43,072 nucleotides of DNA from Octopus bimaculoides (lineage: Eukaryota). The notes under the pieces were generated by a model. It did no database searches and was not told the DNA's origin. It saw only the letters and a program-made list of their open reading frames with translations. This document shows, in pieces, positions 1 to 30,603 of the stretch. The position numbers and the translations under genes were made by a program. Positions within the stretch are counted from its first letter, which is position 1, and every line of letters begins with the position of its first letter. The DNA is taken from positions 77,706,308 to 77,749,379 of the forward strand of contig NC_068982.1 in assembly GCF_001194135.2 (NCBI RefSeq), written 5' to 3'.

Positions 1-326
1 TATTCTTTGTAAGTCTAGTACTTATTCTATCGGTCTCTTTTGCCGAACCGCTAAGTTACGGGGACCTAAACACACCAGCATCGGTTGTCAAGCAATGCTA
101 GGGGGACAAACACACACACATATACATATATATATATACATACATATATATATACATATATACGATGGGCTTCTTTCAGTTTCTGTCTACCAAATCCACT
201 CACAAGGCTTTGGTCGGCCCGAGGCTATAGTAGAAGACACTTGCCCAAGGTGCCACGCAGTGGGACTGAACCTGGAACCATGTGGTTGGTAAGCAAGCTA
301 CTTACCACACAGCCACTCCTGCACCT
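1..326 (-). mobile_element. tRNA-derived composite SINE, CpG-intact (young) copy, truncated by the window edge
   Basis: The minus strand reads AGGTGCAGGAGTGGCTGTGTGGTAAG...GGTTCCAGGTTCAGTCCCACTGCGTGGCACCTTGGGCAAGTGTCTTCTACTATAG (pol III box A/B-like head), then a (TA/CA)n linker, then a 3' module. The same modules recur at 18781-19166 and 25350-25790. Confidence 0.85.
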
Positions 327-642
327 ATACATAAGGTTAAGTTATAAATATAAATACTCACATATATATATACATACTTTTACATATACATACATATACG
401 TACACTTAAATGTACATACATAAATGCCTGTATATACATACAAATGAATCAATTATTATAATTATTATTATTATTATTAGATGCATTATATTATTCATAT
501 TATATAAAATGTAAACAGAGGTATGAGAAAGTTATAAGAGGAGTAATATTGTAATTTATAAAAAGAATATATCCTAAAATTTTAGTTATGTAAGAATGAA
601 ACTGTGTATATATGAGGAGCACACATATATACACACATACAT

Positions 643-1197
643 ATCATCATCATCATCGTTTAACATCTGCCTTCCATGCAAGCATGGGTTGGATGATTTG
701 ACTGAGGACTGGCGAACCAGATGGCTGCACCAGGCTCCAATCTGATCTGGCAGAGTTTCTACAGCTGGATGCCCTTCCTAATGCCAACCACTCAGAGAGT
801 GTAGTGGATGCTTTTACGTGCCACCGGCATGAAGGCCAGTCAGGCGGTACCGGCTACGCTCGAAATGGTGTATTTTATGTGCCACCTGCTCAGGAGCCAG
901 TCCAGCGGCACTGGCAACAACCTTCCTGGGCCTACCTCTTCCACGGGTTCCCTCAACTGTTAGGGAGTGGCACTTTTTCACGCAGCTATCCTCATTCATT
1001 CTCACCACATGTCCAAACCAGCGCAATCGTCTCTCTTGCACACCACAACTGATGCTTCTTATGTTCAGCTTTTCTCTCAAGATACTTACACTCTGATGGG
1101 TATGCACATTTACATTACACATCCAGCGGAGCATACTGGCTTCATTCCTTGCGAGCTTACGCATGTCCTCAGCAGTCACAGCCCATGTTTCACTGCC
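643..1197 (-). mobile_element. RTE-clade LINE 3' fragment (ORF C-terminus plus 3' UTR and (GAT)n tail), internally deleted
   Basis: 1197-922 translates to GSETWAVTAEDMRKLARNEASMLRWMC...QERRLRWFGHVVRM...GTRGRGRPRK, typical RTE post-RT motifs (YGSETW, EMRMLRW, RRLRWFGHV, RGRPK). It joins directly to a 3' UTR ending in ACCCATGC...GTTAAACGATGATGATG. Confidence 0.9.
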
Positions 1198-1959
1198 NNN
1201 NNNNNNNNNNNNNNNNNNNNNNNNNNNNNNNNNNNNNNNNNNNNNNNNNNNNNNNNNNNNNNNNNNNNNNNNNNNNNNNNNNNNNNNNNNNNNNNNNNNN
1301 NNNNNNNNNNNNNNNNNNNNNNNNNNNNNNNNNNNNNNNNNNNNNNNNNNNNNNNNNNNNNNNNNNNNNNNNNNNNNNNNNNNNNNNNNNNNNNNNNNNN
1401 NNNNNNNNNNNNNNNNNNNNNNNNNNNNNNNNNNNNNNNNNNNNNNNNNNNNNNNNNNNNNNNNNNNNNNNNNNNNNNNNNNNNNNNNNNNNNNNNNNNN
1501 NNNNNNNNNNNNNNNNNNNNNNNNNNNNNNNNNNNNNNNNNNNNNNNNNNNNNATAAAGGTTAACGCGTGCGTTCTGTCGTGATACAAACAATATATGAG
1601 TATATGCATATATATGTACATGTATGTACATACCTTCATCTACATGTACATATAGATACATAACTGGGTACATGACGTGGCAAAAGAACATGGACAAAAT
1701 GATAAACAAGGTACAACAAACAAGCAAGCCACATAGAAACATGTCCTTCATCAGCTGCCACCATTAAAACACCGGCGTTTCAAAGAATTAAGGCAGTACG
1801 CATCGTTGAAATGGTTCTTCCCACGAACACAAATTAAATTTTTTTTGTGGAGGGTAGTGGCGGACGGAAAACAAGACAGGAAAATGAAACGGTGAATAAT
1901 ATGTATATATATATACATATATATATGGATATATATGTATATATATGTATATATTTATA

Positions 1960-2110
1960 TAGTGAGAATTTACAAAAAAAACAAAAGATGAACACGGGTG
2001 TGAAAACAACAAACTGATGTATTAGTTTAACACTCGGGAAGTGAGAAAGTCTTTGACGCTTCAAGCCTACGCTCTTCGACAGAGAGGAACACAGAAATAA
2101 ACAGGGACAG
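1960..2110 (-). mobile_element. Probable Penelope-like element terminal fragment with a degenerate minimal hammerhead-like motif
   Basis: Minus strand 2084-2051 reads CTCTGTCGAAGAGCGTAGGCTTGAAGCGTCAAAG. A homologous copy lies at 9200-9375 on the + strand. The family assignment is inferred. Confidence 0.4.
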
Positions 2111-2377
2111 AAAATAAAATAGGTTTAGCAATCTATCATGGCAAATGCTGGACAGAGGGGTCACACAGGAGAACTAGGAAGAAGGGGAGATAATAATGTA
2201 GTGGTGATCCCAAAACGAAGGTGTGCGTGCATGTGACCAGTAGAATAAGTACTGGATTTACAAAGAATAAGTCCTGGAGTCAATTTGTTTGACTAAAGTT
2301 GATACTCCAGCATGGCCACAGTCAAATGACTGAAGCAAGTAAAAGAAATAAAAGAAATATATAATACATATATATAT

Positions 2378-2779
2378 ATCATCATCATTTAACGTCCGCT
2401 TTCCATACTAGCATGGGTTGGACGATTTGACTGAGGACTGGTGAAACCAGATGGCTACACCAGGCTCCAATCTGATTTGGCAGAATTTCTACAGCTGGCT
2501 GCCCTTTCTTATGCCAACCACTCAGAGAGTGTAGTGGGTGCTTTTACGTGCCACCAGCATGAAGGCTAGTCAGGTGGTACTGGCAACGGCCACACTCAAA
2601 ATGATGTATTTTACGTGCCACCTCCACAGGAGCCAGTTCGGCGGCACTGGCGACGATCTCACTCGAATGTTTTTACACGTGCCACCAGCACAGGTGCCAG
2701 GAAGGCAATGTTGGGCACAGGTGCCATGACGATTTCGCTTTCGCTTGCCCCAATAGGTCTTCACAAGCCGAGTTTCGTG

Positions 2780-2781
<2 letters not shown>
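2378..2781 (-). mobile_element. 5'-truncated RTE LINE 3' UTR copy
   Basis: Same tail, core and tandem GTGGCACGT(A/G)AAA units as 643-921 and 33091-33735; three units present. Confidence 0.85.
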
Positions 2782-2819
<38 letters not shown>

Positions 2820-3024
2820 AAATATATACACACACATATATATTTATCTTTGTTTTTATGTGAAGCTAGGTATAAAAACAATTTAACATTAAACTGATGG
2901 ATAACTGTGTACTTTTAGTAGAATAAACATATATTAAACCTTTACAAGGAAAAGTTCAACATTGACTATGAAGTGTAATATATATGTGTGCAGTGTGTGT
3001 GTATATGTATGTATGTATGTATAT

Positions 3025-3350
3025 ATCATCATCATCGTTTAACGCCCGTTTTCCATGCTGGCATGGGTTGGACGTTTCGATTGGGGTTTGGGAAGCCAGG
3101 AGGCTGCACCATGTCCCAATCTTGTCTGGCAGTGTTTCTACAGCTGTATGGCCTTCCTAAAGCCAACCACTCCGAGAGTGTAGTGGATGCTTTTTACGTG
3201 CCACTGGAACAAGGGGGTAGAGGAGCTGGCATTGACCATGATCAGATGGTGCTTTTTACGTGCCACCAGTATGGAAGCCAGTCAAGGCGGCACTGGCATC
3301 GGCCACGTTCGGATCGTGCTTTTTACGTGCTACTGGCATGGGGCTCACAA
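3025..3350 (-). mobile_element. 5'-truncated RTE LINE 3' UTR copy
   Basis: The + strand shows a (CAT)n tail, TTTAACGCCCGTTTTCCATGCTGGCATGGGTTGG, the core and three TTTTACGTGC units. Confidence 0.8.
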
Positions 3351-4096
3351 CTACAATTTCCATATTTATATATATTATATGTTACAAAATAATTTGCAGA
3401 GATAGAGAAAGCAATTCACAGAGACAGAACACCAACACACGCACTTTGGGAGACAACATACCCAGATAGCACTATAAGTATTGATTTGAATTCATCCTAT
3501 TCTGTTTATACACTCACACATATATTACAGATGAGAGCACAGAATAATATGTAGATATATAGATTAAGATAGTAATCTCAGTGTGTGATCACATGTCATG
3601 ACAGAGAAAGCTATGAAAGTTAGTCATCTCATCAAAAGATAAAACGCTTCATTAGTACAATCTTACAATAAATGCCATTTCTCAATATTTTGGGAAAAGT
3701 GGACTATGATATTTTTGCTTTTTGTGAGAAGATGACCATTGCACGACAACCTAGAATAGCATAGCATATATATGTACTTATGTGTGTGTGTGTGTGTGTA
3801 TGCTATCATGTATGTGGTGTGTGAATTTATAGCTTTTTGTACATAGTTTTGTTACACACACACATATACATGATACATATATAATTGATTATAATTACAT
3901 TGAATATAAAAAAATTATTGGAGTAGAAATCAACACCAGATCTTGAGTAGTGTTATATATATGTGTGTGTGTGTGTGTATCAGATAAATATAGATATAAA
4001 TGAGTGGCTAACTAATGTCAACTGCTTGAAAGTTTCAAATATGCAAAAATAAGCCATTTTACTAATACATATATATATGAGTGTGTGTGTATATTA

Positions 4097-4135
<39 letters not shown>

Positions 4136-4449
4136 NNNNNNNNNNNNNNNNNNNNNNNNNNNNNNNNNNNNNNNNNNNNNNNNNNNNNNNNNNNNNNNNN
4201 NNNNNNNNNNNNNNNNNNNNNNNNNNNNNNNNNNNTATATATGTATATATATATATTATTATTATTATTAGAAGAATTGAAGCTATGTGTGTGTGTGTGT
4301 GTATAGCTAGTTATACAATCTCAAGAAGAGATAGTGTAGTAATGTATGTGTGTATATATATATATATATATCGACTTTAAATATATATATATACATATAT
4401 ATAGATAGATAGATTCAAAAGAAAGGAATATCATAAAGAAATGTCTTAC

Positions 4450-4544
4450 CATACGAGATGCACGACGATCATGATGACGGCAGGTACAACGAGATCGTCG
4501 GATCCGATGGACCACCTTCGTTTAAATACCACTAAACCAGGCAT
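4450..4544 (-). CDS. DAGLA: Diacylglycerol lipase (DAGL, alpha-like), first coding exon, 95 nt; downstream exons lie left of the window or in N-gaps
   Basis: ATG at 4544 with A at -3 gives MPGLVVFKRRWSIGSDDLVVPAVIMIVVHLV(W), followed by a phase-2 donor TG|GTAAGA at 4449. This matches the human DAGLA N-terminus as I recall it (MPGIVVFRRRWSVGSDDLVLPAIFLFLLHTTW) better than DAGLB ([22 protein letters not shown]). Confidence 0.9.
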
Positions 4545-4879
4545 CGTGTACTCAGAATGTTTTATTCAGGCTGGTCGTAGAATATCCGGAAATATGTATG
4601 CATTTGTTATTTATTCCATTTCATTTCATCCTTTCATATGGTAGGCGAAAATCTTTCCGAAAATATTTGGTTAAAATGCCTCCGAAATAAATCCATGATG
4701 ACCACAGCGAAGTTATATTGCAATATAACTGGGTTGTTTCAGTTGGATACTTTGATTTTTTTTACTTTCCACTGCTGTTCGTCGATTTATGTACGGTAGT
4801 GGTTGATCTGTTTGTTGTTGATATTTAGTACTGAGAGTTTTACCTTGCTTTGCCAGAGAAATCCTAGCTGCAGTCACCC

Positions 4880-5030
4880 AACAACAGCCGCCTCCGCTGT
4901 TGCCGCTGCCGCCGCCGCGATGCAACCGAGTCGTCTGCTTCGCTGCTGGCAATGCGCGCGCACATCTCTGACGTCACAACCGGAAATGGATGTCTGAAGC
5001 TGGTTGACGCCAATTAAACCACACGACCAG
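4880..5030. promoter_or_regulatory. Candidate bidirectional promoter shared by DAGL (-) and EXT2 (+)
   Basis: CpG-rich segment in AT-rich DNA. It contains the palindrome TGCGCGCGCA (4953-4962), a full CRE TGACGTCA (4969-4976), an ETS-like AACCGGAAAT (4978-4987) and CCAAT (5010-5014). A GCC/GCT-rich tract lies at 4887-4920. Confidence 0.65.
4985..5030 (+). other. EXT2: Candidate short non-coding first exon of EXT2 (start approximate)
   Basis: Donor CCAG|GTAAAT at 5030/5031 just downstream of the promoter motifs. Candidate acceptors precede the EXT2 ATG (TCTTTCTTTTTCAG at 9894; ACCAG at 9925). Human EXT2 also has a non-coding exon 1. Confidence 0.5.
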
Positions 5031-7204
5031 GTAAATGGCTTTTGCTTATCGTCTCATTCATCAATGTTTTTCTTATTAATTCCACCCACAAACTTATTAA
5101 CTATACTTCTAACTTCATCTGGTGCTTGGAATTATATACGAAGTTGATTATTTATAGTCGTTAATGTGTTATTTGTTGACACATCTACGATCATAGATCA
5201 TTTGTTGGATGTCATTTTCTTTACACATTTTAAAATTTTAATTTAATTGATGTGAGAGAAAGGAAAGTCTAATAATTAACATCCTCGTACCCTACATAGA
5301 TACGAAGGACTATGTCAAAATCATTAGACTTTTCCCTCTTTCTCCGCTTTCCAACTGTATATATTCTTCAGTAATTATTGCCGACACAGACAAACCTCCA
5401 CTTGCTTCATCGGACCTTAATGTTTACTTTATCAAAATACTTTTCTCTGGTCGCTAGTGATATTAGCTTTACATTGGAACTAACTATATTTTCAGGAGAT
5501 TCGATAAATGTCTTGATATATCAAAATTGGAAATTATCAATTCCTTTGAGATTATTGAATTATTTCTCTTGGGACCATAACAGATGAAACGACTTAGGAT
5601 CCCAACTTATTGTTTTTGTTATTGTTTTCTTTGTGATATCTTTAATTTACCCCGAAATAACATTAACATTTGTTATCAGTTAATCTCATTCTGGAATTTA
5701 GAAGAGTATTAACCTGTTGTTTTCTCGTTATCTTACTCAGCAGTCTTGGAATTCTCTGTCGAAGAAATTATCGGACAGGAAATAAATATCTTAAAATTCC
5801 ATCTTCGTTGTAATCTTCAAAGTAATTACGTTTCTCACATCTGTTCTTAGGAACAAAATTGAAATAGTCCTCCTCCACCTTTGTTTTATGAATTTTGACA
5901 AAACTTCGACAACAACCTCCTCAATCTTCTGAAGATTGAAATAACATCGAATGGGATATTTTGTCGATGAAGATAAATTTGGTAATCAAGGAATCTCGAT
6001 TTGATTTCTCCTTTAAAAAAGCAACTTATTTAGTTTCTTAACTCTTGAAATATATTCTGAATGCTCTTAGGAAGAAAGAAAATGCTTGGTACATAATTTC
6101 ATTTCTTTTTCCAAGTGTCATATTTTGGTAAGCAGCCATCATCATCATCATTATTAGGCTATCTACCAATGTTAACCAATTTCGGCCCCGCTTTTTGGAT
6201 AATTTAACATTCATTATATCGCTAATATTACTCTTGAGAAACGTATGATCACAGTCACAAACCTGCTTCTTATCTACTTAAGAAACATTAATTAAAACTG
6301 TAAATTATTTTAAATCAAGGGGCACCTACTTACGCGCATTGGGGGTTATTAAAATAAAAGATTTAAGCTTTTATAGACAATATCTGTGTATTATGATCCC
6401 AGTTCATTTCTGCTCTGAAATATTTGTTTACTTATATTTAGTTTAATTGTATTATCTAATCCTAGCTATTCCCATTACTTGTATCATTTTACCAATTCCA
6501 CAGAGATGACTGGACATTATAATAAAACTATTTGACAAGTTTTATTATAATTTAGCATCTTAAAGTTTAATTTTGAAAATTATTTATTTAAATAATCAAG
6601 CGCTGTTTATAGTTGGTATATTTGCAGGACACGTTACATACAATGTCATCTTTGTTTTTCCCAGCAGTATAGCAACTCATGCTATAACCTTGTGAAATTA
6701 AAACATTACTTAAAATTTGTCACTAGTTTTAAATTGTTAAATTCCTTTTCGGTTCTAGATACCATTTTAATATGTTCAACGGAAGTGAACAGACAAACCA
6801 CAGGAAGCATGTGTACATTATCTAAATATCTTCAGACAACAGCTATCCTACACATTCACCATTATCTATGTATTTTTAGATAAATATAAAGATGTATAAA
6901 CTTTAAACTGACGTTTCCCGAATTCAAGACAAACAGATGGCGCGTTTGGAGTTCAGGGCATTCGTGTCAAGTGAAGAGATATTGTTCAGTTCCATTAGTG
7001 TATACTTTTACCTTTTACTTGTTTCAGCTACCGGTCTACGGCCATGCTAGGGCACCTCCTTCGAGTGTTTAGCCGAACAAATACATCTCTCCCCTAGTAT
7101 CTGTTATTTTGTTTGCCTCTTTTGCTGAACATCTAAGTTACAAGGATGTAAACAAATCAACACTGGTTGTTAACCGGCGATGGCGGACAAAGACATACAC
7201 ACAC

Positions 7205-8345
7205 ACACATCATAATCATCGTCATTTTAGCGTCCGTTTTCCAATACTGGCATGAATTGGATGGTTTGACAGGACCTGGTGAGCTGTAGGGCTGCATTGT
7301 ACTCCAAGTCAGCTTTGGCATGGTTTCTATGGCAGGATGCCCTTCCAAATATCGACACTTTACAGTGTGTACTGGATGCTATTTTTCGTGCCAAGTAACT
7401 TGCAAGACAGGAAAGGAAAAAAGTCCTTTTAACTAAGTGGGTGAGTTTTTGAGAGGGCAGAGAGGTGGCTTTATGCCAGGGACAAGCAAAGGCCACTTGC
7501 TAACTCTGCAGTTATACAAGGGTGAGTGGGAATATCTGGGAGAAAGATAGGATGGAAGTGATGGAGTGCCATAACATCAAGGAGCAACAAATAGTATGGG
7601 CTGTGTATCAGGAAAGAGAAGTGGTTATAAGTGTGTGTGGGGAGAGTAACAGATAGCTAGAGATAGGGTAGAGGTAATTGTAGTGCGTGATTAACAGGAA
7701 TGGCGGTGTGGCTTGANNNNNNNNNNTGTAGTGCGTGATTAACAGGAATGGCGGTGTGGCTTGACGGGGGGGGGGGGGAATATCAGTAATGACGTGGGGT
7801 TAGGTGAGAGAGACAGAAATGGCTCAGGAATGATGGTCCAGGTACTAGGGGATAATGAACAAGACATAAAAGTAGTGAGGAATGAGATATAGAGATACAT
7901 AAGGGTGGTTGTAGTGAAGTGTGTGTATGGTGGCAGACATAAGTGAGCATTGGGAATGATAGCAGATATGAGAGGTATTAAAATGAAGTATAGCAGAGCA
8001 AAGGAGAAGCAATATAGCTAGAGGTATGTGGGATGGAATGATAATGAGAATGAGGGCTGGAATTGTGTGTGTGTGGTTTGGGTGGGGGAAGGCAGTAACT
8101 GGTAGCATAAAGAGTTAGGGGATGTAATATGTGCCAAGGACAGATGAATGTTGGGGGAAAGGAATGGGTAGGGAGATGCGATGTGGAGAATGCTTGATGG
8201 GGCAGTGTGGGTATAGAGATAAGGACAGGCTTCCATACAGTTTCTGTCTACCAAATCCATTCACTAGGTATTGATCAACCTGGGACTAGACTTGCCCAAT
8301 GTTTCATGCAGTGGGACTGAACCTGAAACTATATGTTTAGCAATT
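7205..8345 (-). mobile_element. Old long SINE-like composite: tRNA-type head, long CT-rich middle, RTE-type 3' tail
   Basis: The + strand shows a (CAT)n/RTE-type tail at 7205-7410, a GA-rich stretch at 7410-8200 and a SINE head at 8225-8345. It is homologous, in opposite orientation, to 13240-14115. Confidence 0.55.
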
Positions 8346-9199
8346 AAATCTATAAATCCATCAGTAGCTTAGGATGAATTATTAGAAATTATTTTAAAAT
8401 CTAGATCATTTGTCATATAAATGGCACTGGCAGACAGAAATGGTACCTAGGTGTCCTTTTAAGTTCTGAGTTTAAATCCTGCTGAGGTCAATTTTGCCTT
8501 CCAGTTTCCTAGGGTCAATAAAATAAGTACCTGTCAAGTAGTGAGGGTGATTTATGTTGTCCCTACTACTGTTCCATAATAACCAAATTTGTGGCCATTT
8601 TTCTGTCCCAGAAACCATCATCTTCTCTACTAGATTTTAGATGTAACCTGTGTCACATCTCTGGCAAAAAGTGTTTTTGCTTAATCAAAACCTAAGCCAA
8701 CAACCAACTGAGATTAGTTATGTTCTTTCATATATTATCACCTTTTTTTTATAAAAAACTTCATTTAGAAGTGCAAAGAAACTATGCCATTGAACTCAGA
8801 TGCAGCCCAATTAGCTATTTTCTTTGTGTCAACCTCTTCTTGCTATTATACAATACACAAGTGTGGCTGTGTAGGTGAGAGGCTTACTTCCCAGGCACTT
8901 GGTTTTAGGTTCAATCCCACTGCATGACATCTCGGGCAACCATCTTCCATGGAGTTTATTTAGGCAGATTTTCTACTGCCAGATGCCCTTCTGGCCACTA
9001 ATCCTCATCTATTTTCAAGCAAGATAATATTTTCCTGTGGCCAGACATGTTTCCATAGAATACTGGAAATGAATGACACTGATTGTATGACAGTGACACT
9101 CATTTGTAACTACCATGCAATGTCAAGGCAAAGTGACACAAGCACTCATGTGCACTTGCATGTTCATACTCACACACATCTCATCATGGTGGACCATTG

Positions 9200-9375
9200 A
9201 ACTCTGTATATTTTTTTTTCATTCTCTCTGTGTTTTTTCCCTCTTAATCCTTTCTGTCAAAGAGCATAGGCTCAAAACATAAATAAATTTTCCACTCTTT
9301 CTGAGCATTAAACTAATACACCTGCTTGTTGTTCCTACATCTGTCATCATCTTTTGTTTTCTGTAAACTTGAACT
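9200..9375 (+). mobile_element. Second copy of the Penelope-like terminal family, CpG-decayed
   Basis: CTTTCTGTCAAAGAGCATAGGCTCAAAACATAAA at 9250-9283 and the downstream TTAAACTAATACA match the 1960-2110 copy. Confidence 0.45.
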
Positions 9376-9927
9376 ATATATATATATATATATNNNNNNN
9401 NNNNNNNNNNNNNNNNNNNNNNNNNNNNNNNNNNNNNNNNNNNNNNNNNNNNNNNNNNNNNNNNNNNNNNNNNNNNNNNNNNNNNNNNNNNNNNNNNNNN
9501 NNNNNNNNNNNNNNNNNNNNNNNNNNNNNNNNNNNNNNNNNNNNNNNNNNNNNNNNNNNNNNNNNNNNNNNNNNNNNNNNNNNNNNNNNNNNNNNNNNNN
9601 NNNNNNNNNNNNNNNNNNNNNNNNNNNNNNNNNNNNNNNNNNNNNNNNNNNNNNNNNNNNNNNNNNNNNNNNNNNNNNNNNNNNNNNNNNNNNNNNNNNN
9701 NNNNNNNNNNNNNNNNNNNNNNNNNNNNNNNNNNNNNNNNNNNNNNNNNNNNNNNNNNNNNNNNNNNNNNNNNNNNNNNNNNNNNNNNNNNNNNNNNNNN
9801 NNNNNNNNNNNNNNNNNNATGTTGTACCTGCACTTTATTTTCTTCATAAAGTTTGCAAATATTTTCAGTTCACATTTTCTTCTTTCTTTTTCAGTTTTTT
9901 TTTTTCTTAAAAAAATAATTACCAGCC

Positions 9928-10430
9928 ATGGTTGGGAGAACTAGAGTGGTGCGAACATTTTATAAAAACAATTACCAATTCTTTATATTAATATTATTGT
10001 TTGTATTACTGCTAAGTGCCATTTTGTTTTGGCCTAATTCAAACAAGCCATCTGAAGTTTACCATTTCAATTTTCAAACTGCTGAAAAAAGTAGAGAAGT
10101 TAAAATCCTGTCAACTAGCTCCCAGCCATTACCTCATAACCAAGACTGCATCTTCCACACATGTATGGATGTTTACCACTGTGGATACAATGATGATACC
10201 AAAATCAGTGTTTACATATATCCTTTTGAAAAATTTGTGGATGAGAAAGGAATTGGTATTTCTCAGCCCATCTCTCCTGAATTTATGGAAATAGTACAGA
10301 CAATTGCTAATAGTCCATTTTATACACTTTCGCCGGAGTCTGCTTGTATATTTGTTCCATCTATTGACATGCTAAATCAAAACACTTTTAGAAGTGAAGA
10401 AATGGGACAAGCCCTTGCAACATTACATTC
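9928..10430 (+). CDS. EXT2: Exostosin-2 (heparan sulfate co-polymerase subunit), first coding exon, 503 nt
   Basis: Kozak GCCATGG. Type II signal-anchor FFILILLFVLLLSAILFW. CIFHTCMDVYHCG, ISVYIYP and ACIFVPSIDMLNQN match EXT2 motifs (CRMHTCFDVYRCG, IKVYIY, ACLFVPSIDVLNQN). Phase-2 donor TC|GTAAGT at 10431. Confidence 0.96.
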
Positions 10431-10452
10431 GTAAGTACTTTTTTTCTATTTT

Positions 10453-10874
10453 CCATCATCATCATCATTATCTAACATTCAATTTCCGATGCTTGCATGG
10501 GTCAGATGGAATTTGTTGAGGCATATTTTCTACAGCTGAGATGCCCTTCTTGCCACCAATTGTCACTTATTTTCAAGCAAGATATTTCCCCATGTTGTGG
10601 TATGTTTTTTTTTGCAGAAGACTGGAAATGAACAGTGTTGCTTGTATGATGGTGATGCTCATTTACAACCATCATATGTCAAGAAAAGGGTATACACATG
10701 CACACACATGACAGGCTTCTTTCAGTTTCTCTCTATCAAATCCATTCACAAGGATTTGGTCAGCCTGGGGGCTCTTGTAGAAATCACCTACCTCAGGTGC
10801 CATGCAGTGGGACAGAACCTGAAATCATGTGGCTTGGAAGCAAACTTCTTAACCACACAATCATGCCTGCATCT
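10453..10874 (-). mobile_element. Composite SINE (tRNA-type head plus RTE-type tail), decayed
   Basis: (CAT)n tail at 10455, GATGCCCTTC core, and head ending TCATGCCTGCATCT; the same layout as 14526-14952. Confidence 0.7.
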
Positions 10875-11712
10875 CAATAAAACTATAACATGTCTGCAGC
10901 TGTCACCTTATCTGCTAACAAAGAACAGATATTTTTTCTCTCCAAGTATGGAAATTTTTTTGGGAATTATCTCCTCTTTTAATCAAGAGTCACAGCTAAC
11001 ACCAGGTTTTGGTTTTCCTTCTCTAACTAAAAAGCAAATTTCAGTTAATTGTTTTATCCTTTACTTGATTTAGTCATTGGACTGCAGCCATGCTGGAGCA
11101 TTGCCTTGAAGGGTCTAGTCAAACAAATCAACTCCAGTATATATTTTTGAAAGTCTGGTTCTTATTCTATCAGTTTCTTTTGCCAAACTGCTAAGTAATG
11201 GGAATGCAAACAAACTTTGTTTGGAAATAAGTGAGAGTTAGTGACAAGAAGGGTATCTCAGCTATAGAAAATATGCCTCAACAAATTCCATCTGACTCAT
11301 GCAGTGTGGGACACACATGTATATATGACAGGTTTCTGCATAGTTTCTGTCTACTAAATTTACTCACAAAGCCTAGATTATAATAGAATATACTTGCCCT
11401 TGATACTGTACAGTGGGACTGAATCTGAAAACCACATGGTTGCAAAGCAAGCCATACTTGCACCTATTTGAAAATTTTTCTGTATGGCATTTAGTATATA
11501 CCCTCTCCCTAATTACTTGATTTGTAACTCTCATTTGTTCACTCCATCTGGCTGAAAGTAGGTATCACTACTGGAAAACTAGCAAATGTTTCATTTACTT
11601 TACAATACTGATTTTAACTTCTTTTAAGGGTATGATGCACCCTTCACAGGCACACACATGTGGCAAAAATCATAGGAATGTTGGGTTTTCTGTTTCTCAT
11701 TTGTTATTATTA

Positions 11713-12297
11713 TTAACCCTTCATTAGTCACCTGACCTTGCTGAACATGGTTAGTTACATGGGGTATTTACCCACCTCAATACAAAAACGTTTATAGTTT
11801 TAGTATTATGTAAAATATACTCATTCTCTTGGTTCAGAATGTATATCTGAAATCACTGCTTAGAAGTTTGAAACCCTTGTAGCTGATTGATATAAAACAA
11901 TACAATAAAATAAATTATAAAATTAAGGAAAAACTAAAAAATCTTAGATTCAGATCATATTTATTTTGAAAATATGCACAGAATACACCATTTTGTGGAA
12001 TTTTTTTTATCTCTGTGATGAATATTAACATGAAAAAATAACATAACAAGCAATCTCCGTTACAATATGCATTAAATCAAAACTTGAACTGTGTTAGTCA
12101 CATGGGGTGACTAGACAAAATGATGTCTACCTTCCATGACAACTGAGCCGCAACTGCACCACACAACCTGCAGCACACACTCACTGAGTCAGAAGAGTAG
12201 AGGAAGGGAGCCAAAAAATAAGTTGCCAACTAGAAATTACGAGCATTTAAAAAAAATTCAGCTAACAACACACCCCATGTGACTAATGAAGGGTCAA
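11713..12297. mobile_element. Non-autonomous piggyBac-type element (577 bp) with perfect 15-bp TIRs
   Basis: TTAA (11713-11716), CCCTTCATTAGTCAC (11717-11731) ... GTGACTAATGAAGGG (12279-12293), TCAA. Internal TTAGTCACATGGGGTG-type repeats at 11751, 12094 and inverted at 12271. Confidence 0.85.
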
Positions 12298-12740
12298 CTC
12301 TTGTGTTGAAATATGCTGCCTTTGTTTCAATTAATTTTGAAAATAAGAAGAAACTTAGTAAAATCAGTGTCATTATTAAACTGGTTGGTATAAGGTGGTG
12401 AACTGGCATAATTGTTACTGTGCTGGGCAAAATGCTTAGCGGCATTTTGTTTCTTTACATTCTGAATTCAAACTTTGTAACAGTTGACTTTACCTTTCAT
12501 CCTTTCAGTGTCAATAAAATAAGTACCAGTTGAGCATTGGAGTCATTGCAATCAACTTAACCCCTCCTCTGAAACTGCTAGCCTTGTGCCAAGATTTGAA
12601 ACCATTATTAAAGTGGTTTTTGATACATAAATAAATTAACATGAAATTTTGATGGAAGGTTTTAATTTAGATCACTTTGAACAAGAAGTTTTATCATAAG
12701 ATAAAAGGCAGTCTCAGACAGGTTGATATTAAAAGGTTCA
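12294..12740 (+). mobile_element. Second piggyBac-type MITE family copy, interrupted by a SINE
   Basis: Its halves match the uninterrupted copy at 18261-18490 (GCCTTTGTTTCAATTAATTTTGAAAAT... / ...ATGAAATTTTGATGGAAGGTTTTAATTTAGATCA...AAAAGG). Ends are TCAA and TTCA. Confidence 0.7.
12393..12610 (+). mobile_element. tRNA-SINE of the (ATT)n-tailed family, inserted in the MITE with a 15-bp TSD
   Basis: GGTGAACTGGC...ATGCTTAGCGGCATT...GACTTTACCTTTCATCCTTTC...TTTGAAACCATT. TSD CATTATTAAACTGGT (12371-12385) / CATTATTAAAGTGGT (12603-12617). Confidence 0.85.
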
Positions 12741-13239
12741 AGGAAAATTCTTGTGACTATTGACATCTGGTATCTCTCAGCAATCAGGAAATGGTTTGGT
12801 CATGGTATTTCATATTAATTAATTAATAGGATGTGTTAAGATTTGTAATTGAGTTTTGTATTATATTTTATCATTAATATAGATTCTATTCTTGTGTGGG
12901 TGTTTCAATATAAGATCTAACGTGGCCTTTGTATGTCACATGTAGTTCATGAAGTTGTCGATATTCATGTTTACAGATGAATTTATGTTACATTGGACAT
13001 TGACATCACCATTTATGGGAAATGACAGGTACTTATTTTATCAACTCCAGAAGGATTAAAGACAATATTAATCTTGGTATGATTTAAACTTGAAATGTGA
13101 AAAGATACAAATAGTATGTAACACTTAGGTTGGTATGCTGTTAAGTCTTTCATTCATCACCTGAGGAATCTCTATTAATAACTAAAACCTACCCACCACA
13201 ATAGAATTGATATCCTAAAACCACCTTAGTAAATGCTTG

Positions 13240-14115
13240 TATGTGCAAAGCTCTGCCCCGTTCTCACTGCTCTTCCCATCAAACTTCCCCCACATCTCAT
13301 TCTCTACACTCTTCACTTCTTTATCTCTGATATTATTCAACTACCATAATCACCTGAAAGCAAAGTGAGTACAAACTACACACCTACCCTTTCTTTACCT
13401 TCCCTCTCCTCCCCTCCCCAAAACAGTTTCCATTCCTCATTATCTTCTTCCAGTCAAGCTCCTTCCTCTGTGCTATACTCCATTCCTAACACTTCCTTTA
13501 TCCTCTATCATTCCCAATGCCGTCATGTATGTAACAATCCCTCCCCCTGAGCCATTCCTATATCTCTCACCTTTAGTTACTACAGCCACCTCTATCCCAT
13601 CTAACCATCTCCCCTCATATTCTTATGAAATTTTTCTCTCTGTCCCCACCCCCTCAGTACAATCCTCTGTATCACTTCACTTATTCTTCTCCACTGCGCC
13701 TTGAAGCTGTGTTCTGAATCATATTCACCACCATCTGTCCTACCTTCCTCATCTCTATCTTCCTCCCTTTTTCTCCAACTGGGATATCCTTGTATCTCTT
13801 CTACAGCAAGACACCTATCTCTGTCCTTCTATCAGTCTTTTAACCTCTCATCAACTGGTACAAAGTTACCTCCCTTGATACTCCCTGTCACCAATTAAGG
13901 GGACGTTGTCTTGTCTTGCAAGTTACTTGGTGACCCCACCAGTGCTGGTGTAACAACTAAAGTACTCAGTACACTTTGTAAAATAGTTGTCATTAGGAAG
14001 TGCATCCAGCCATAGAAATCATGCTAAAACAGACAGTAGCATTTAGTATAGCCCTCTGGCTTGCCAGCTCTTGTCAAATCGTCCAACCCATGCCAGCATA
14101 GAGGACAAACATTCA
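13240..14115 (+). mobile_element. Old long SINE-like composite with CT-rich middle and RTE-type tail
   Basis: GTCTTGCAAGTTACTTGG (about 13912-13929) is the reverse complement of CCAAGTAACTTGCAAGAC (about 7391-7408). CCCATCAAACTTCCCCCACATCTC resembles the reverse complement of 8172-8200. Confidence 0.55.
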
Positions 14116-14525
14116 TAAGCAGAGGTGTAAATTTCATTAGCAGGTATGTAAAATCCTTTTGGTTATATCGAAGATGTCGTTCTATGCTTTTTGTATACAA
14201 TCTGATAGGGCTTGCTCTGAACACGCTGTAAAGTTTAAGGTTATGAAGACTCTTTTGTTTTGTCAAAGACATGGCTATCTCTCTAATGCTACTGCCATGA
14301 AAAACACACCCTGTACACTTATCTGTAAAATGGCTGCTGTTAGGAAGGGCTTCCAGCTGTAGAAACTAACTGAGATACAGTTACTGTGACCTATCTACAT
14401 AAGCAGTACTTCAGAATATGTACTGATTCTGACTGTGGCAATTTGTCTTATCTATCCCAGTATGAAAAGTGGACATAAAATGATGATGATAAAGAAAGGA
14501 GAAATAGACATCAGAACATTCCAAT

Positions 14526-14952
14526 GAATCATCATCATCATCATCATTGCCATTTTAATGTCCACTTTTCCATGCTTGCAAGGTTCTGATGGAATTCATT
14601 GAAACAGATTTTCTTTGGGCAGCAGCCTTTCATGTTTCCAAACCTCATTTGTTTGTAAGCAAGTAGTATTTCCCCATAACTAGACATGTTTTCATGGAAG
14701 ATTAGAAATGAATGGCTTTGCTTGTAAGACTGACACTCATTTACAACTATCATGTGATTTTTAAAATAAGAAGGCACACACACACACGCACACATGATGG
14801 GCTCCTTTTAGTTTCCATCTACCAAAACAACTCACAAGGCTTTTGTCAGCCTGGGGCTATAGAAGACACTTGCCCTAAGTGCCATACAGGTGAACCTAAA
14901 AGCATGAGATTGGGAAGCAAGTTTCTTAACTAAACAGCCATACCTGCATCTG
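14526..14952 (-). mobile_element. Composite SINE (tRNA-type head plus RTE-type tail)
   Basis: (CAT)n tail at 14529-14546, decayed core, and head ending ACAGCCATACCTGCATCT. Confidence 0.75.
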
Positions 14953-16909
14953 TTCCAAACATTCCAATCAACCTTACCATAATAAAAAAAGCAATGAAAG
15001 AAAAGTATTAATAATTACCTCATTTCATCTAGATAAGACTTTGAAGGTTTTGGAATGATGATGAATGTTGGAATTGTTTATAAATGTAACATACAACATT
15101 AGTAAGGAAATATCAATGTCTTGCTTTCAATTTGTGTGTGTGTGTGTGTGCTAAGATGGCAAGCTGGTAGAATTATTAACATGTCAGGTAAGATGCTTAG
15201 TGACATTTCATCTGTCTTTACATTGAGTTCCAATTTTGCTGAGATTGACTTTGTTTTTCATCCTTTTGGGATTGATAAAATAAGTACCAGTTGATCATTG
15301 GGGTTGATTAATTGACTTGGCCCCTCCCCCAAAACTTCTGGTCTTTTGCCAAAATTTGAAACTAATATATGTGTGTGTTTGTGTGCGTGTGTGTTATACT
15401 TGTGATGATCAACATCATCATTATAATGTCTACTTTTCCTTGCTTGCATGGGGCTGATGAGGTTTTATTAAGGCAGATTTTCCATGATCAGAGGCCCTTC
15501 TTGTTGCCTGCTCTTACCTGTTTCTAAGCAAGGTAATATTTCTCCACAGCAAGGAATACTAGAAATAAATAACACTGCTTGTTTGTCAGTGAAGCACCCA
15601 CTACACTCTCTGAGTGGTTGGCGTTAGGAAGGGCATCCAGATGTAGAAACTCTGCCAAATCAGATTGGATCCTGCTGTTGCCATCTGGTTTCACCAGTCC
15701 TCAGTCAAATCGTCCAACCCATGCTAGCATGGAAAGTGGACGTTAAACGATGATGATGATGATGACACACATATATACAACAGACTACTTTCAGTTTCTA
15801 TCTACCAAATCCACTCATGAGGCTGTGGTTGAAATATGGCTAGAGTAGAAGTCACTCGTCCAAGGTACCATGCAGTTGGTCAGAACTTGAAACCATGTGG
15901 CCAGAAAGCAAACTTCCTAACAATACAGCCATGCCTGCACCTGTGTTGTGGTTTGTATTTTTTTGTCAAGCTAGCCTTTTAGGCAGACATGGAATAGTGT
16001 GTGTGTGTTTCACAAGTTTTTATTTTTGGTAATTTCTTTAAATTGCTGTCTCATTTTCCTTTTATCCCGTGACAACTGATGAGTCCGTCTAACAGAAATG
16101 AAGTATTTCTATTAAAATTATATTTAAACAGTCAATCAAGGAAGTCCGTTCTGTTACTGAGGGTGGGGTGGAGAGATTGAAGGAGTATGTCTTGTTTAAT
16201 TGCTGTGTATTTCAGTTCTTCATACTGCCGTCACCAATTAACATTTTTGATTGATTAAGTATTACATGCACATCCATACACAACACACACATCATGAGTT
16301 AATGAAGCAGCCTCAAAGTGGTCGTTTGACCTGCTAGAAATAGCAGCAAAATCAATGTTTTTGCTATTACACCCATCACATGAGATGGGTATAATAGTTA
16401 AATTTTATTGGAAAAGGGAACAGAATTTGAAGGCAAAAATGTAAAATAAATAAATTTCTTAGAACAAAAATTCTTTGAAGAAACAATCACCCAATTCCTT
16501 GCTCTTTTTTTCTCTCTGAGGCAGTGATAGCTATTCTGAAAGTCTACCAATCAGAGATTACTAATGTTGTATGTTACATTTATAAACAATTCCAAGGTTC
16601 ATTATCATTCCAAAACCTTCAAAGTCTTATCTGGATGAAATGAGGTAATTATAATACTTTTCTTTCTTTTTTTTTTATGGTAAGGTCCATTGGAGTGTTT
16701 GGAACCGATGCAGGTATGGCTGTGTAGTTAAGAAACTTGCTTTCCAATCCCCTGCTTTTAGGTTCACCTGTATTGCACTTAGGGCAAGTGTCTTCTATAG
16801 CCCCAGGCTGACAAAAGCCTTGTGAGTTGTTTTGGTAGATGGAAACTAAAAGGAGTCCATCATGTGTGTGTCTTATTTTAACAATCACATGATAGTTGTA
16901 AATGAGTGT
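14733..16909. repeat. Local inverted duplication: arms 14733-15105 and 16558-16909, spacer 1452 bp
   Basis: The arms are about 90% identical by eye, include non-SINE sequence, and share private SINE deletions. Confidence 0.9.
15595..15765 (+). mobile_element. Short 5'-truncated RTE LINE 3' end
   Basis: CACCCACTACACTCTCTGAGTGGTTGGCGTTAGGAAGGGCATCCAG...ACCCATGCTAGCATGGAAAGTGGACGTTAAACGATGATGATG. Confidence 0.85.
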
Positions 16910-18260: not shown

Positions 18261-18490
18261 TTAATCCTTGTGTTACATTGTTTTTGTTAAAATACACTGC
18301 CTTTCTTTCAATTCATTTTGAAATTAACGAAACATTTATTAAAATAACTTTCTCATTATTAAGCTAATGTTTGGGATATAGATTAATATGAAATTTTAAT
18401 GGAATGTTCTGATTTAGATCATTTCAAAAACATGAAGTTTATGTTATAGAACCAGGGCTGATTTTGAGTTTGTTGCCATCAAAGGGTTGA
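18261..18490 (+). mobile_element. piggyBac-type MITE (family 2), uninterrupted copy
   Basis: TTAA-TCCTTGTG ... CATCAAAGGG-TTGA; the body matches 12294-12740 and, inverted, 25120-25336. Confidence 0.7.
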
Positions 18491-18780
18491 CCAGTTATGT
18501 AACGAAAAGACTATGAAGGTTTAGACTTTGGGCTTGCAGATAGTTAGTATTAACTTCAATCGGTCAATAAATGCCTGAAGCAATTTTGAGCATTAAGGAT
18601 GCTGAATTATTGGTGAAGTGAATCTTGAAGAGAGTAGGTAAAATAAGGCCAAAACTCATTAATTTCCAGCCAAATATCAATGAAATAAGTAGTGCTCACC
18701 AAACACATATTAAATATTCCAACTATATCAATATTAGTAGACTGAGTTTTTATTGTTCTTTATGAATTTCATTAAGTATC

Positions 18781-20419: not shown

Positions 20420-20462
<43 letters not shown>
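20135..20462. repeat. Compound microsatellite (TAGA-like, TATG, TA)
   Basis: Imperfect GATA/TAGA repeats followed by (TATG)n and (TA)n. Confidence 0.85.
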
Positions 20463-20468
<6 letters not shown>

Positions 20469-30396: not shown

Positions 30397-30603
30397 TTGG
30401 AACAATGGGACCAATCATCTCTTATTCAACATGCTTCCTGGAGGCATGATGGAATATAGTACTATTCTTAGTGTCAAGACAGACAAGGCTATCATTGCAG
30501 GAGGTGGATTTTCTACATGGACTTACCGAGAGACTTATGATGTATCCATTCCTGTCTTCAATCCTCTTGTTGCTAAGGTTAAGCTCCCTAATTTACCTAT
30601 CAC
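30397..30603 (+). CDS. EXT2: Exostosin-2, second coding exon, 207 nt (absent from the ORF track)
   Basis: TTTTCAG|T TGG... gives (S)[68 protein letters not shown], matching EXT2 [16 protein letters not shown]...[23 protein letters not shown]. Phase-2 donor AC|GTAAGT at 30604. Confidence 0.97.

What the first reader, a model, noticed from the sequence alone, without database searches (positions are those of the whole stretch)
4450..5030. DAGL-alpha and EXT2 are head-to-head on a compact CRE/ETS bidirectional promoter
Seen: a 95-nt DAGL first coding exon on the - strand, a + strand donor at 5031, and between them a ~60-bp motif cluster (TGCGCGCGCA palindrome, TGACGTCA, AACCGGAAAT, CCAAT) in the window's only clear CpG-rich segment. 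Known: DAGL-alpha makes the endocannabinoid 2-AG, EXT2 polymerises heparan sulfate, and ETS and CRE motifs are enriched in bidirectional promoters. Human DAGLA (11q12) and EXT2 (11p11) share a chromosome but are not adjacent. Inference: 2-AG synthesis and heparan sulfate synthesis, both involved in axon guidance, may be co-transcribed from one cAMP-responsive promoter in this animal.
Basis: partly seen in the sequence, partly recalled or inferred. Interest (0 to 1): 0.7.

Follow-up and report, generated by a model that had tools for sequence, protein, structure and literature searches.

The report
Old head-to-head DAGL–EXT2 gene pair
A diacylglycerol lipase gene and the heparan-sulfate polymerase gene EXT2 start back-to-back on either side of the window's one strong CpG-rich segment, and four other distantly related animal sequences show the same arrangement, so it is an old, ordinary kind of divergent gene pair whose shared, cAMP-driven regulation is still unproven.

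Summary
A 95-nt DAGL first coding exon lies on the - strand at 4450-4544. The first coding exon of EXT2 starts at ATG 9928 on the + strand. Between them, 4845-5030 is the CpG-richest part of the window (17 CpG in 186 bp, o/e 1.09, against 0.29 window-wide). It holds the window's only TGACGTCA and only GCGCGCGC, plus a CCGGAAAT and a CCAAT. A good donor (CAG|GTAAAT) follows at 5031.

New here: DAGL exon 1 also lies head-to-head upstream of EXT2 exon 1, 1.45-2.0 kb ATG to ATG, in four other distantly related animal EXT2 lineages (L001/L002, L033, L044, L045). I did not find it within 3.9-10 kb in six further EXT2 lineages, including Bulinus and Centruroides. It was also absent from two DAGL-anchored loci, including Ruditapes. 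The adjacency is therefore genuine and ancient.

Not shown: any transcription start site, use of the 5031 donor, co-expression, or cAMP responsiveness. The CRE/ETS cluster is not conserved in the distant loci.

Verdict: a new member of a known kind, namely a conserved divergent gene pair that probably uses a TATA-less, CpG-island-type bidirectional promoter.

The parts
4450..4544 (-). DAGL (alpha-like) first coding exon, coding part: 95 nt, ATG at 4544, ending in phase 2
   Evidence: tblastn gives 62.5% identity to the human DAGLA N-terminus. The same 32-residue exon is found in L001, L033, L044 and L045. Named DAGL-alpha hits appear.
4448..4449 (-). Splice donor GT of the DAGL coding exon (TG|GTAAGA)
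   Evidence: Read from the sequence. The weight-matrix score is 4.0, in the top 1.6% of GT sites. In all homologous loci the reading frame hits a stop codon straight after the final W, as expected at a conserved exon end.
4545..4844 (-). DAGL 5' leader or 5'UTR intron. It holds six upstream ATGs (4603-4696) and a second CCGGAAAT at 4586-4593
   Evidence: Upstream ATGs were listed and the motif. A weak candidate donor AAG|GTAAAA sits at 4844|4843 (top 3.6% of GT sites). Whether this stretch is spliced out is an inference.
4845..5030 (.). Core CpG-rich, TATA-less promoter region shared by the two gene starts (186 bp, 59% GC, 17 CpG, o/e 1.09)
   Evidence: There is no TATAAA inside it. It belongs to no repeat family listed (the 20 largest of 27).
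4953..4962 (.). TGCGCGCGCA palindrome. It resembles an NRF1 site but lacks the central AT, so the binding factor is unknown
   Evidence: It contains the only GCGCGCGC in the window. P=0.06 under local composition.
4969..4976 (.). Full palindromic CRE, TGACGTCA
   Evidence: Single occurrence in the window against 0.11 expected. P=0.004 under local composition.
4978..4987 (+). ETS-like site AACCGGAAAT
   Evidence: It differs from the strict GABP consensus CCGGAAGTG (PMC2077898) at two of nine positions.
5010..5014 (+). CCAAT pentamer
   Evidence: Not significant on its own (P=0.24). It lies upstream of any - strand start in the core, where an NF-Y box for DAGL would sit, but downstream of a + strand start near 4990.
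4977..5030 (+). Putative short non-coding first exon of EXT2. The 5' end is unknown; the 3' end is set by the donor CAG|GTAAAT at 5031
   Evidence: Donor score 5.2-5.3. It is the only comparably strong + strand donor before the assembly gap, apart from five at 7279-8875, a stretch largely made of SINE-like repeats. No transcript evidence.
5031..9894 (+). Putative EXT2 5'UTR intron (4.9 kb, SINE-like repeats, N gaps at 7717-7726 and 9394-9818)
   Evidence: The acceptor TTCTTCTTTCTTTTTCAG|T has 15 of 15 pyrimidines and starts the exon at 9895.
9895..10430 (+). EXT2 first coding exon (ATG 9928, 503 nt coding, donor TC|GTAAGT at 10431)
   Evidence: Pfam Exostosin_GT47 E=1.5e-18.
30397..30603 (+). 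EXT2 second coding exon ([16 protein letters not shown]...)
   Evidence: tblastn gives 68% identity to human EXT2 residues 180-244. Acceptor and donor were read.

Best explanation
DAGL (alpha-like) and EXT2 are true divergent (5'-5') neighbours, and the arrangement is evolutionarily old. In this genome their 5' ends most probably meet in one CpG-island-type, TATA-less promoter region of about 0.2-0.5 kb (4845-5030 and its flanks).

From that region EXT2 would be transcribed rightwards as a short non-coding first exon ending at 5030. That exon would be spliced over a 4.9-kb intron to 9895, or to 9926, just before the ATG at 9928. DAGL would be transcribed leftwards towards its ATG at 4544, either through or spliced over 4545-4844. 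General promoter factors of the CREB/ATF, ETS and possibly NF-Y types would open the region for both directions.

Shown: gene identities, orientation, spacing, the CpG-rich segment, the motifs, the splice-site sequences, and conservation of the pairing.

Inferred: both start sites, use of the 5031 donor, which factors bind, and any co-regulation.
For: 1. Gene identity and orientation are established.

2. There is no N gap between 4236 and 7716, so the DAGL exon and the promoter core lie on continuous sequence.

3. The same head-to-head pair, with the same 32-codon DAGL exon, occurs 1.45-2.0 kb (ATG to ATG) from EXT2 in L001/L002, L033, L044 and L045. Their EXT2 exon-1 sequences are only 40-58% identical to each other and to the window.

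4. 4845-5030 is the top CpG and GC peak of 43 kb. It carries a CRE plus ETS pair with joint P of about 1e-4 under local composition.

5. The sequence just before the EXT2 ATG is AT- and pyrimidine-rich and CpG-poor, with stacked acceptors, as at the 3' end of an intron. Acceptor candidates 22-110 nt before the ATG are also seen in L001, L033 and L045 and, by eye, 39 nt before it in L044.

6. The 5031 donor is in the top 0.7% of GT sites. The other comparably strong + strand donors before the gap lie at 7279-8875, a stretch largely made of SINE-like repeats. L001 has a comparable donor 386 nt from its DAGL ATG, against 486 nt here.

7. GABP/ETS, NRF-1, CCAAT, YY1 and Sp1 sites are over-represented in human divergent promoters (PMC2077898), as are ATF sites (PMC3121118). 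Conserved 5'-5' pairs with short spacers are a recognised class (PMC3514665).
Against: - No transcript, CAGE or chromatin data could be reached, and no cephalopod relative was present in any searchable collection. No start site is therefore observed.
- An EXT2 first exon starting near 4990 would be only about 40 nt long. The CCAAT would then lie downstream of that start.
- The motif cluster is placed just as well for a DAGL-only promoter.
- A 425-N gap (9394-9818) lies right before the EXT2 coding exon and could hide sequence.
- The CRE/ETS cluster is not found in the distant loci that keep the pair.
- GC skew supports - strand transcription across 4840-4940 but shows no clear + strand signal after 4980.
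- The pair was not found within 3.9-10 kb upstream in six other EXT2 lineages, nor within 10 kb in two DAGL-anchored loci. The arrangement is therefore dispensable.
Confidence: 0.6

Rival explanations
1. The CpG-rich motif cluster is the promoter of DAGL only. EXT2 starts elsewhere, either in the unsequenced gap 9394-9818 or at another exon inside 5031-9393, and the GT at 5031 is a chance donor.
For: For a - strand start around 4900-4950, the CCAAT (5010) and the CRE (4969) sit at roughly -60 to -110 and -20 to -70, which are typical proximal positions. That placement is my inference. The - strand is G-rich across 4840-4940, as in a transcribed 5' leader. Thirty-three GT sites in the window score as well as the 5031 donor, so one falling within 60 bp by chance has a probability of about 2% per strand, which is not negligible. 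The gap cannot be read.
Against: The sequence between the gap and the EXT2 ATG looks like the end of an intron and has almost no CpG. All ten gaps in the window are flanked by TA-type microsatellite, so the gap probably hides simple repeat. No other CpG peak lies between 5100 and 9393, apart from a modest one at 6876-7100 that runs into a SINE-like repeat. In four other lineages the whole DAGL-ATG to EXT2-ATG interval is at most 2 kb.
Confidence: 0.25
2. The adjacency is a neutral relic of ancestral gene order. Two independent core promoters happen to lie close together, without shared control or selection for linkage.
For: The pair was not found within the available 3.9-10 kb upstream in six of ten other EXT2 lineages tested, nor in two DAGL-anchored loci. 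The named cases are Bulinus truncatus, Centruroides sculpturatus and Ruditapes philippinarum. Promoter motifs differ between the positive loci. In human the two genes are far apart on chromosome 11 (my own knowledge).
Against: Orientation and tight spacing (1.45-2.0 kb ATG to ATG, or 5.4 kb here because of a repeat-filled intron) are kept in five lineages whose EXT2 exon 1 has diverged to 40-58% identity. This is the signature reported for constrained 5'-5' pairs (PMC3514665). L001 and L044 share a 71-bp block at the same distance (125-195 bp) from the DAGL ATG.
Confidence: 0.3
3. One reading: one cAMP-responsive CRE/ETS promoter co-regulates 2-AG synthesis and heparan sulfate synthesis for axon guidance.
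For: A perfect palindromic CRE sits 1 bp from an ETS-like site in the core. Both are non-random.
Against: There is no TATA box in the core. From my own knowledge of genome-wide CREB studies (Zhang et al. 2005, PNAS; not re-read here), most CREs in CpG-island promoters are bound constitutively and are not cAMP-inducible, and inducibility goes with a nearby TATA box. No full CRE occurs between the two genes in L001, L033, L044 or L045. No paper in the library links the two genes in this way.
Confidence: 0.08
4. The adjacency is an assembly artefact: a mis-join in a gap-rich draft genome.
For: The window has ten N gaps.
Against: There is no gap between 4236 and 7716. The same adjacency is seen in four independent assemblies of other animals, three of them long contigs of 22 kb to 1.4 Mb.
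Confidence: 0.02

Closest known systems
Human-type bidirectional (divergent) CpG-island promoters, e.g. HSPD1-HSPE1 and GABPA-ATP5J (PMC2077898, PMC3121118, PMC3514665)
   Same: Head-to-head genes. The region is CpG-rich and TATA-less. It carries ETS, ATF/CRE and CCAAT-type motifs. Both genes have, or probably have, short non-coding first exons.
   Different: Start sites are not mapped here. The ETS site is CCGGAAAT rather than the strict GABP consensus CCGGAAGTG. The GCGC palindrome is not a canonical NRF1 site. The two products have no obvious shared pathway, unlike HSPD1/HSPE1.
Conserved ancient microsyntenic pairs of metazoans, 5'-5' class (Irimia et al. 2012, PMC3514665)
   Same: The 5'-5' orientation and short spacing are kept in several distantly related animal lineages. 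The pairing has been lost in some lineages.
   Different: The DAGL-EXT2 pair is not mentioned in that paper's main text, and its supplementary lists were not available. The organisms behind four of my five positive loci are unidentified, so the phylogenetic depth cannot be stated.
Human EXT2 and DAGLA gene structures (my own knowledge, not checked here)
   Same: EXT2 has a non-coding first exon, and its ATG lies in a large second exon. The DAGLA N-terminus MPGIVVFRRRWSVGSDDLV... is encoded at the very start of the coding sequence.
   Different: In human the genes lie at 11p11.2 and 11q12.2 and are not adjacent. Here the two ATGs are 5.4 kb apart.

Membership tests
Bidirectional promoter (divergent genes with start sites under 1 kb apart) | The two genes lie on opposite strands, 5' end to 5' end | tested here: met
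   DAGL ATG at 4544 on the - strand and EXT2 ATG at 9928 on the + strand.
Bidirectional promoter (divergent genes with start sites under 1 kb apart) | Transcription start sites less than 1 kb apart | not testable with these tools
   No transcript or CAGE data. Indirectly, the DAGL ATG and the candidate EXT2 exon-1 donor are 486 bp apart.
Bidirectional promoter (divergent genes with start sites under 1 kb apart) | No other gene between the two | tested here: met
   There is no ORF resembling a known protein, no Rfam family and no tRNA. Only SINE-like repeats were found. Two N gaps remain unread.
Bidirectional promoter (divergent genes with start sites under 1 kb apart) | CpG-island character, TATA-poor, with ETS/NRF1/CCAAT/YY1/Sp1/ATF-type motifs | tested here: met
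   CpG o/e is 1.09 against 0.29 window-wide. There is no TATAAA in 4845-5030. A CRE, an ETS-like site and a CCAAT are present.
Bidirectional promoter (divergent genes with start sites under 1 kb apart) | Both genes depend on the shared segment, or are co-expressed | not testable with these tools
   This needs expression data or reporter and deletion assays.
Conserved 5'-5' microsyntenic pair (PMC3514665) | Adjacency and orientation kept in several distant lineages | tested here: met
   Window, L001/L002, L033, L044 and L045. Not found within 3.9-10 kb in six other EXT2 lineages, nor in two DAGL-anchored loci. The taxa of the positive loci are unknown.
Conserved 5'-5' microsyntenic pair (PMC3514665) | Conserved non-coding sequence in the spacer | tested here: inconclusive
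   The only alignment of note is a 71-bp, 66% identical block between L001 and L044 (E=0.004). Nothing aligns to the window. No close relative of the window species was available.
cAMP-inducible CREB target promoter | Full CRE close to the start site | tested here: inconclusive
   TGACGTCA lies at 4969-4976, but the start site is unknown.
cAMP-inducible CREB target promoter | TATA box near the CRE (associated with inducibility, from my own knowledge) | tested here: not met
   No TATAAA in 4845-5030. The nearest is at 5151 on the - strand.
cAMP-inducible CREB target promoter | CREB occupancy and induction by cAMP | not testable with these tools
   This needs an experiment.
EXT2 (exostosin-2) | Exostosin GT47 domain, and closer to EXT2 than to EXT1 | tested here: met
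   PF03016 E=1.5e-18. The nearest database hits are named EXT2 or exostosin-2.
EXT2 (exostosin-2) | C-terminal GT64 domain | not testable with these tools
   Only two coding exons lie in the window.
DAGL-alpha (sn1-specific diacylglycerol lipase alpha) | Conserved N-terminus MPG.V.F.RRWS.GSDD | tested here: met
   My hand count gives 20 of 32 identical to human alpha and 18 of 32 to human beta (both from memory), so alpha against beta is not settled by sequence. The annotation names of the hits say alpha.
DAGL-alpha (sn1-specific diacylglycerol lipase alpha) | Lipase class 3 catalytic domain and long C-terminal tail | not testable with these tools
   The rest of the gene lies outside the window. 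No further exon was found in 1-4449.

The most novel reading that the evidence does not exclude
The DAGL-EXT2 5'-5' linkage is an ancient animal regulatory unit. On this reading it has been held together for hundreds of millions of years by a shared bidirectional promoter, it couples expression of the 2-AG-producing lipase with the heparan-sulfate co-polymerase, and it was secondarily broken in vertebrates and several invertebrate lineages.
Probability: 0.15. Interest if true: 0.5.

Novelty: new member of a known kind. Interest (0 to 1): 0.35.

Why it matters
Divergent gene pairs that stay together over long evolutionary distances are one of the few cases where gene order in animals seems to be under selection. 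Each new pair is a test case for whether a shared promoter is the cause.

This pair is odd because the two enzymes have no obvious common pathway. One makes a lipid messenger; the other polymerises a proteoglycan sugar chain. If they prove to be co-regulated, the pair would give a compact natural two-way promoter for work in cephalopods. It might also hint at coordinated control of two systems used in neural wiring.

If they are not co-regulated, this is simply a correct piece of annotation: EXT2 has a distant non-coding first exon, and the DAGL and EXT2 starts share the window's strongest CpG-rich segment.

Tried and rejected
1. Same-species or cephalopod relatives. The EXT2 exon-1 search gave nothing above 50% identity, and the profile search reached 57% at best, over a partial match. 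Footprinting of the promoter in close relatives and transcript contigs were therefore out of reach.

2. Naming the organisms behind the positive loci. Searching papers for the accession prefixes JAKGBN, JAKGBL, JAAUXT and JAAUYG found nothing. A rough identity clustering of the EXT2 exon-1 hits could not place them, with only Bulinus, Centruroides and human as named anchors.

I worked around this by searching with an alignment in which each peptide was written twice in tandem. The matches cover one copy only.

4. A search for further DAGL exons in the window and in the loci found none.

5. Looking for the same CRE/ETS/GCGC/CCAAT set in the other positive loci. There is no full CRE anywhere. 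L033 has an NRF1-like, ETS and CCAAT cluster, and L001 has YY1-like sites. The motif vocabulary is similar but there is no conserved element.

6. blastn among the five spacers found only the 71-bp L001/L044 block.

7. Rfam and tRNA scans of the whole window found nothing.

8. GC skew as a start-site proxy gave only weak support, and only for the - strand.

9. Literature on the pair. No paper treats EXT2 and DAGLA as neighbours. Irimia et al. do not mention them in the main text and their supplement is not held.

10. Pfam on the ORF fragments at 40.4-42.7 kb and 814-1179 gave no significant family.

Rejected idea: a start site immediately before the EXT2 ATG. The sequence there is a stack of acceptors in pyrimidine-rich, CpG-free DNA.
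Full report
**What the window is.** It is 43 kb of eukaryotic DNA with 36% GC and a CpG o/e of 0.29. It has ten N gaps, and the flanks I read are TA-type microsatellite. It contains many copies of short interspersed repeats. No cephalopod sequence was present in any searchable collection.

**Checking the observation.** On the - strand an ATG at 4544 opens a 95-nt coding stretch (4544->4450) that ends at a donor TG|GTAAGA.
- It encodes MPGLVVFKRRWSIGSDDLVVPAVIMIVVHLVW.
- It also matches database proteins named 'diacylglycerol lipase-alpha-like' (Ruditapes philippinarum) and 'Sn1-specific diacylglycerol lipase alpha' (Amphibalanus amphitrite).
- By hand count it is 20/32 identical to human alpha and 18/32 to human beta, so 'alpha' rests mainly on annotation names.

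On the + strand an ATG at 9928 opens a 503-nt coding exon with a donor at 10431. A second coding exon lies at 30397-30603.
- Together the two exons hit Pfam Exostosin_GT47 at E=1.5e-18.
- The nearest database hits are named EXT2 or exostosin-2.

The donor CAG|GTAAAT would end the exon at 5030.

**Is it more than chance?**
- TGACGTCA and GCGCGCGC each occur once in the window, against 0.11 and 0.00 expected. CCGGAAAT occurs twice, both times inside the CpG-rich stretch, against 0.31 expected.
- These motifs contain CpG, so the fairer null is local composition. Under a first-order Markov model of 4845-5030, a full CRE has P=0.004, CCGGAA P=0.036, both together about 1e-4, GCGCGCGC 0.06 and CCAAT 0.24. 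The CRE/ETS pair is meaningful; the CCAAT alone is not.
- The CpG claim holds. 4351-5150 has o/e 1.0-2.0, and 4776-5100 peaks at 15-18 CpG per 200 bp, against about 2 expected from the window average. The runner-up is 12 per 200 bp at 2576-2800, next to SINE-like repeat copies.
- The 5031 donor ranks in the top 0.7% of GT sites by a simple weight matrix. I wrote that matrix from remembered splice-site frequencies, so the figure is only a ranking. Thirty-three sites in the window score as well. A donor this good within 60 bp of the cluster has roughly a 2% chance.

**The main new result.** The gene pair is old. I used the EXT2 exon-1 peptide and then a profile of it to collect homologous exon-1 ORFs and the contigs that carry them. 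I then looked upstream for the DAGL exon.

The same 32-codon DAGL exon lies on the opposite strand upstream of EXT2 exon 1 in four further lineages. In each, the reading frame hits a stop codon straight after the final W, as expected if the exon ends at the same place.
- L001/L002 (NCBI GCA_022702875.1 and GCA_022702835.1): ATG to ATG 2.0 kb.
- L033 (JAAUXT010045216.1): 1.45 kb.
- L044 (ENA ERZ26222911): 2.0 kb.
- L045 (ENA ERZ21939214): 1.7 kb.

Their EXT2 exon-1 sequences are 40-58% identical to each other and to the window, so they are separate, distant lineages.

The pair was not found within the available upstream sequence in six other EXT2 lineages:
- L040, Bulinus truncatus (10 kb);
- L041, Centruroides sculpturatus (8 kb);
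- L042, L043 and L046 (10 kb each);
- a large cluster of metagenome contigs (up to 9.3 kb in L035).

It was also absent within 10 kb upstream of DAGL in Ruditapes philippinarum (L047) and in L048, whose upstream region is full of retrotransposon ORFs. I could not name the organisms of the positive loci. I can therefore say 'several distant animal lineages' but not how deep in the animal tree. An assembly artefact is excluded by this recurrence and by the absence of any gap between 4236 and 7716.

**Where does EXT2 start?** The 110 nt before the EXT2 ATG are AT- and pyrimidine-rich and almost free of CpG. They carry stacked acceptors at 9852, 9895 (15 of 15 pyrimidines) and 9926. This looks like the 3' end of an intron, not a promoter.
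- Acceptor candidates 22-110 nt before the ATG are also present in L001, L033 and L045 and, by eye, 39 nt before it in L044.
- From my own knowledge, human EXT2 also has a non-coding first exon.

EXT2 therefore needs an upstream exon. Between the DAGL ATG and the gap at 9394, the + strand donors of comparable strength are 5031 and five at 7279-8875, a stretch largely made of SINE-like repeats. In L001 a comparable donor lies 386 nt from the DAGL ATG, against 486 nt here. Together with the CpG peak this makes 4850-5030 the best candidate for the EXT2 start. I put this at about 0.6-0.65. The gap (425 N) is probably TA repeat like the others but cannot be excluded.

**Where does DAGL start?** The - strand has six upstream ATGs between 4603 and 4696. 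A long unspliced leader from the CpG core would carry all of them. There are two readings.
- DAGL starts close to its ATG. A second CCGGAAAT lies 41 nt upstream. L001 and L044 share a 71-bp block with an ACGGAAA core 125-195 nt upstream of their ATGs.
- DAGL starts in the core, and a 5'UTR intron removes 4553/4567-4844. The candidate donor AAG|GTAAAA at 4844|4843 is only in the top 3.6% of GT sites.

The - strand is G-rich over 4840-4940, which mildly favours transcription through that stretch. On either reading the two starts would be under 1 kb apart if the EXT2 exon is real.

**How it most likely works.** One nucleosome-free, unmethylated, TATA-less CpG segment is opened by general factors of the CREB/ATF, ETS and perhaps NF-Y types, and transcription initiates in both directions. 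ETS/GABP, NRF-1, CCAAT, YY1 and Sp1 sites are over-represented in human divergent promoters, and a GABP site can by itself induce reverse transcription (PMC2077898). ATF sites are also listed as over-represented (PMC3121118).

The specifics are weaker:
- the ETS site differs from the strict GABP consensus at two of nine positions;
- the GCGC palindrome is not a canonical NRF1 site;
- the CCAAT is not significant;
- none of the four distant loci has a full CRE between the genes.

L033 has a TGCGCATGCGA, ACTTCCGGTG and CCAAT cluster followed by donors. L001 has a palindromic YY1-like AAGATGGTCGCCATTTTG right before its candidate donor. The promoter vocabulary is of the same general class, but no element is shared. 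Whatever keeps the pair together, it is not this CRE.

'Co-transcribed' is not the right term for divergent transcription. cAMP responsiveness does not follow from the sequence. From my own knowledge of genome-wide CREB work, CREs in TATA-less CpG promoters are mostly bound constitutively and are not inducible, and there is no TATA in the core. A functional link between 2-AG and heparan sulfate synthesis has no support in the sequence or in the searchable literature.

**Comparison with what is known, and novelty.** This fits two known classes: bidirectional CpG-island promoters, and conserved 5'-5' microsyntenic pairs (PMC3514665). The second class reports enrichment of head-to-head orientation and short spacers among ancient conserved pairs. 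I found no mention of DAGL-EXT2 as such a pair, but that paper's supplementary lists were not available. I therefore rate it a new member of a known kind, of modest interest.

**Limits.** Three things limit the conclusions.
- There are no transcript or chromatin data and no close relatives of the window species.
- The taxa of the positive loci are unknown.
- The human probe sequences and the splice matrix come from memory; they were used to find and rank features, not as evidence in themselves.

Noticed in passing
window 36705-36715 (and 4949-4959): The CpG-rich 11-mer GCAATGCGCGC from the promoter core recurs once more. There it is followed by ATGCAC, which gives a near-NRF1 GCGCATGC, directly before a long (CA)n repeat inside the EXT2 intron. 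Two exact copies were found against 0.07 expected.
   Followed up: partly
window 143-307, 7000-7500, 8204-8295, 10689-10780, 14775-14866, 15758-15922, 19002-19155, 21273-21364, 25728-25792, 27805-27869, 34782-34846: There are several families of short interspersed repeats at 61-93% identity (families D11, D15, D17, D18 and D20). From memory they look like the abundant octopus SINE. They account for the secondary CpG and GC-skew bumps, for example 6876-7500.
   Followed up: partly
window 40410-42690 and 42819-43072: A GC-richer block (46-48% GC) carries a string of broken ORFs with reverse-transcriptase-like motifs visible by eye (FDKVDH, YTDNITVV) and a weak zinc-knuckle hit. It is followed by a 30-bp tandem repeat of at least six copies that runs off the window end. 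Pfam on the separate fragments was not significant. It is probably a decayed retrotransposon in the EXT2 intron.
   Followed up: partly
window gaps 1198-1553, 4136-4235, 7717-7726, 9394-9818, 26422-26918, 27407-27605, 28470-28639, 32666-33040, 34257-34591, 35979-36210: Most of the ten N gaps, where I read the flanks, are bordered by TA or TATG-type microsatellite. The gaps therefore probably hide simple repeats rather than unique sequence. The long 'inverted repeats' reported are N runs matching N runs and are artefacts.
   Followed up: no
window 10431-30396: The intron between the first and second EXT2 coding exons is about 20 kb. The window ends 12.5 kb after exon 2 without a third coding exon. 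The gene is therefore very long compared with L044 and L046, where a GT64-domain exon already appears 5-6 kb after exon 1.
   Followed up: no
L033 8720-8815: Between DAGL and EXT2 in this GC-rich unknown animal lies a cluster of TGCGCATGCGA (NRF1-like), ACTTCCGGTG (strong ETS/GABP-type) and CCAAT. Two donors accompany it (GAG|GTAAAT, GCG|GTAAGT). The motif classes are the same as in the window, but there is no CRE.
   Followed up: partly
L001 1874-1900: A palindromic pair of YY1-like half sites, AAGATGGTCGCCATTTTG, lies immediately before a donor AAG|GTGTGT, 386 nt from the DAGL ATG. This is a candidate EXT2 first exon in that species.
   Followed up: no
L044 8930-9660: A second CpG-rich block between DAGL and EXT2 is built of repeated GGATCC-containing units. 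It looks like an inserted repeat or satellite rather than a promoter.
   Followed up: no
L041 8053-8328 and 10013-10288: In the Centruroides sculpturatus scaffold the first part of EXT2 exon 1 appears twice, 2 kb apart, with identical tblastn scores. The remainder of the exon lies 9 kb further on. This is either a local duplication or an assembly duplication.
   Followed up: no
L048 1-9734: Upstream of DAGL exon 1 in this unknown animal, 10 kb is filled with reverse-transcriptase and endonuclease ORFs plus a GDSL-lipase-like ORF. Its relative L045 keeps EXT2 1.7 kb away. Transposon insertion may have pushed the pair apart in L048.
   Followed up: no
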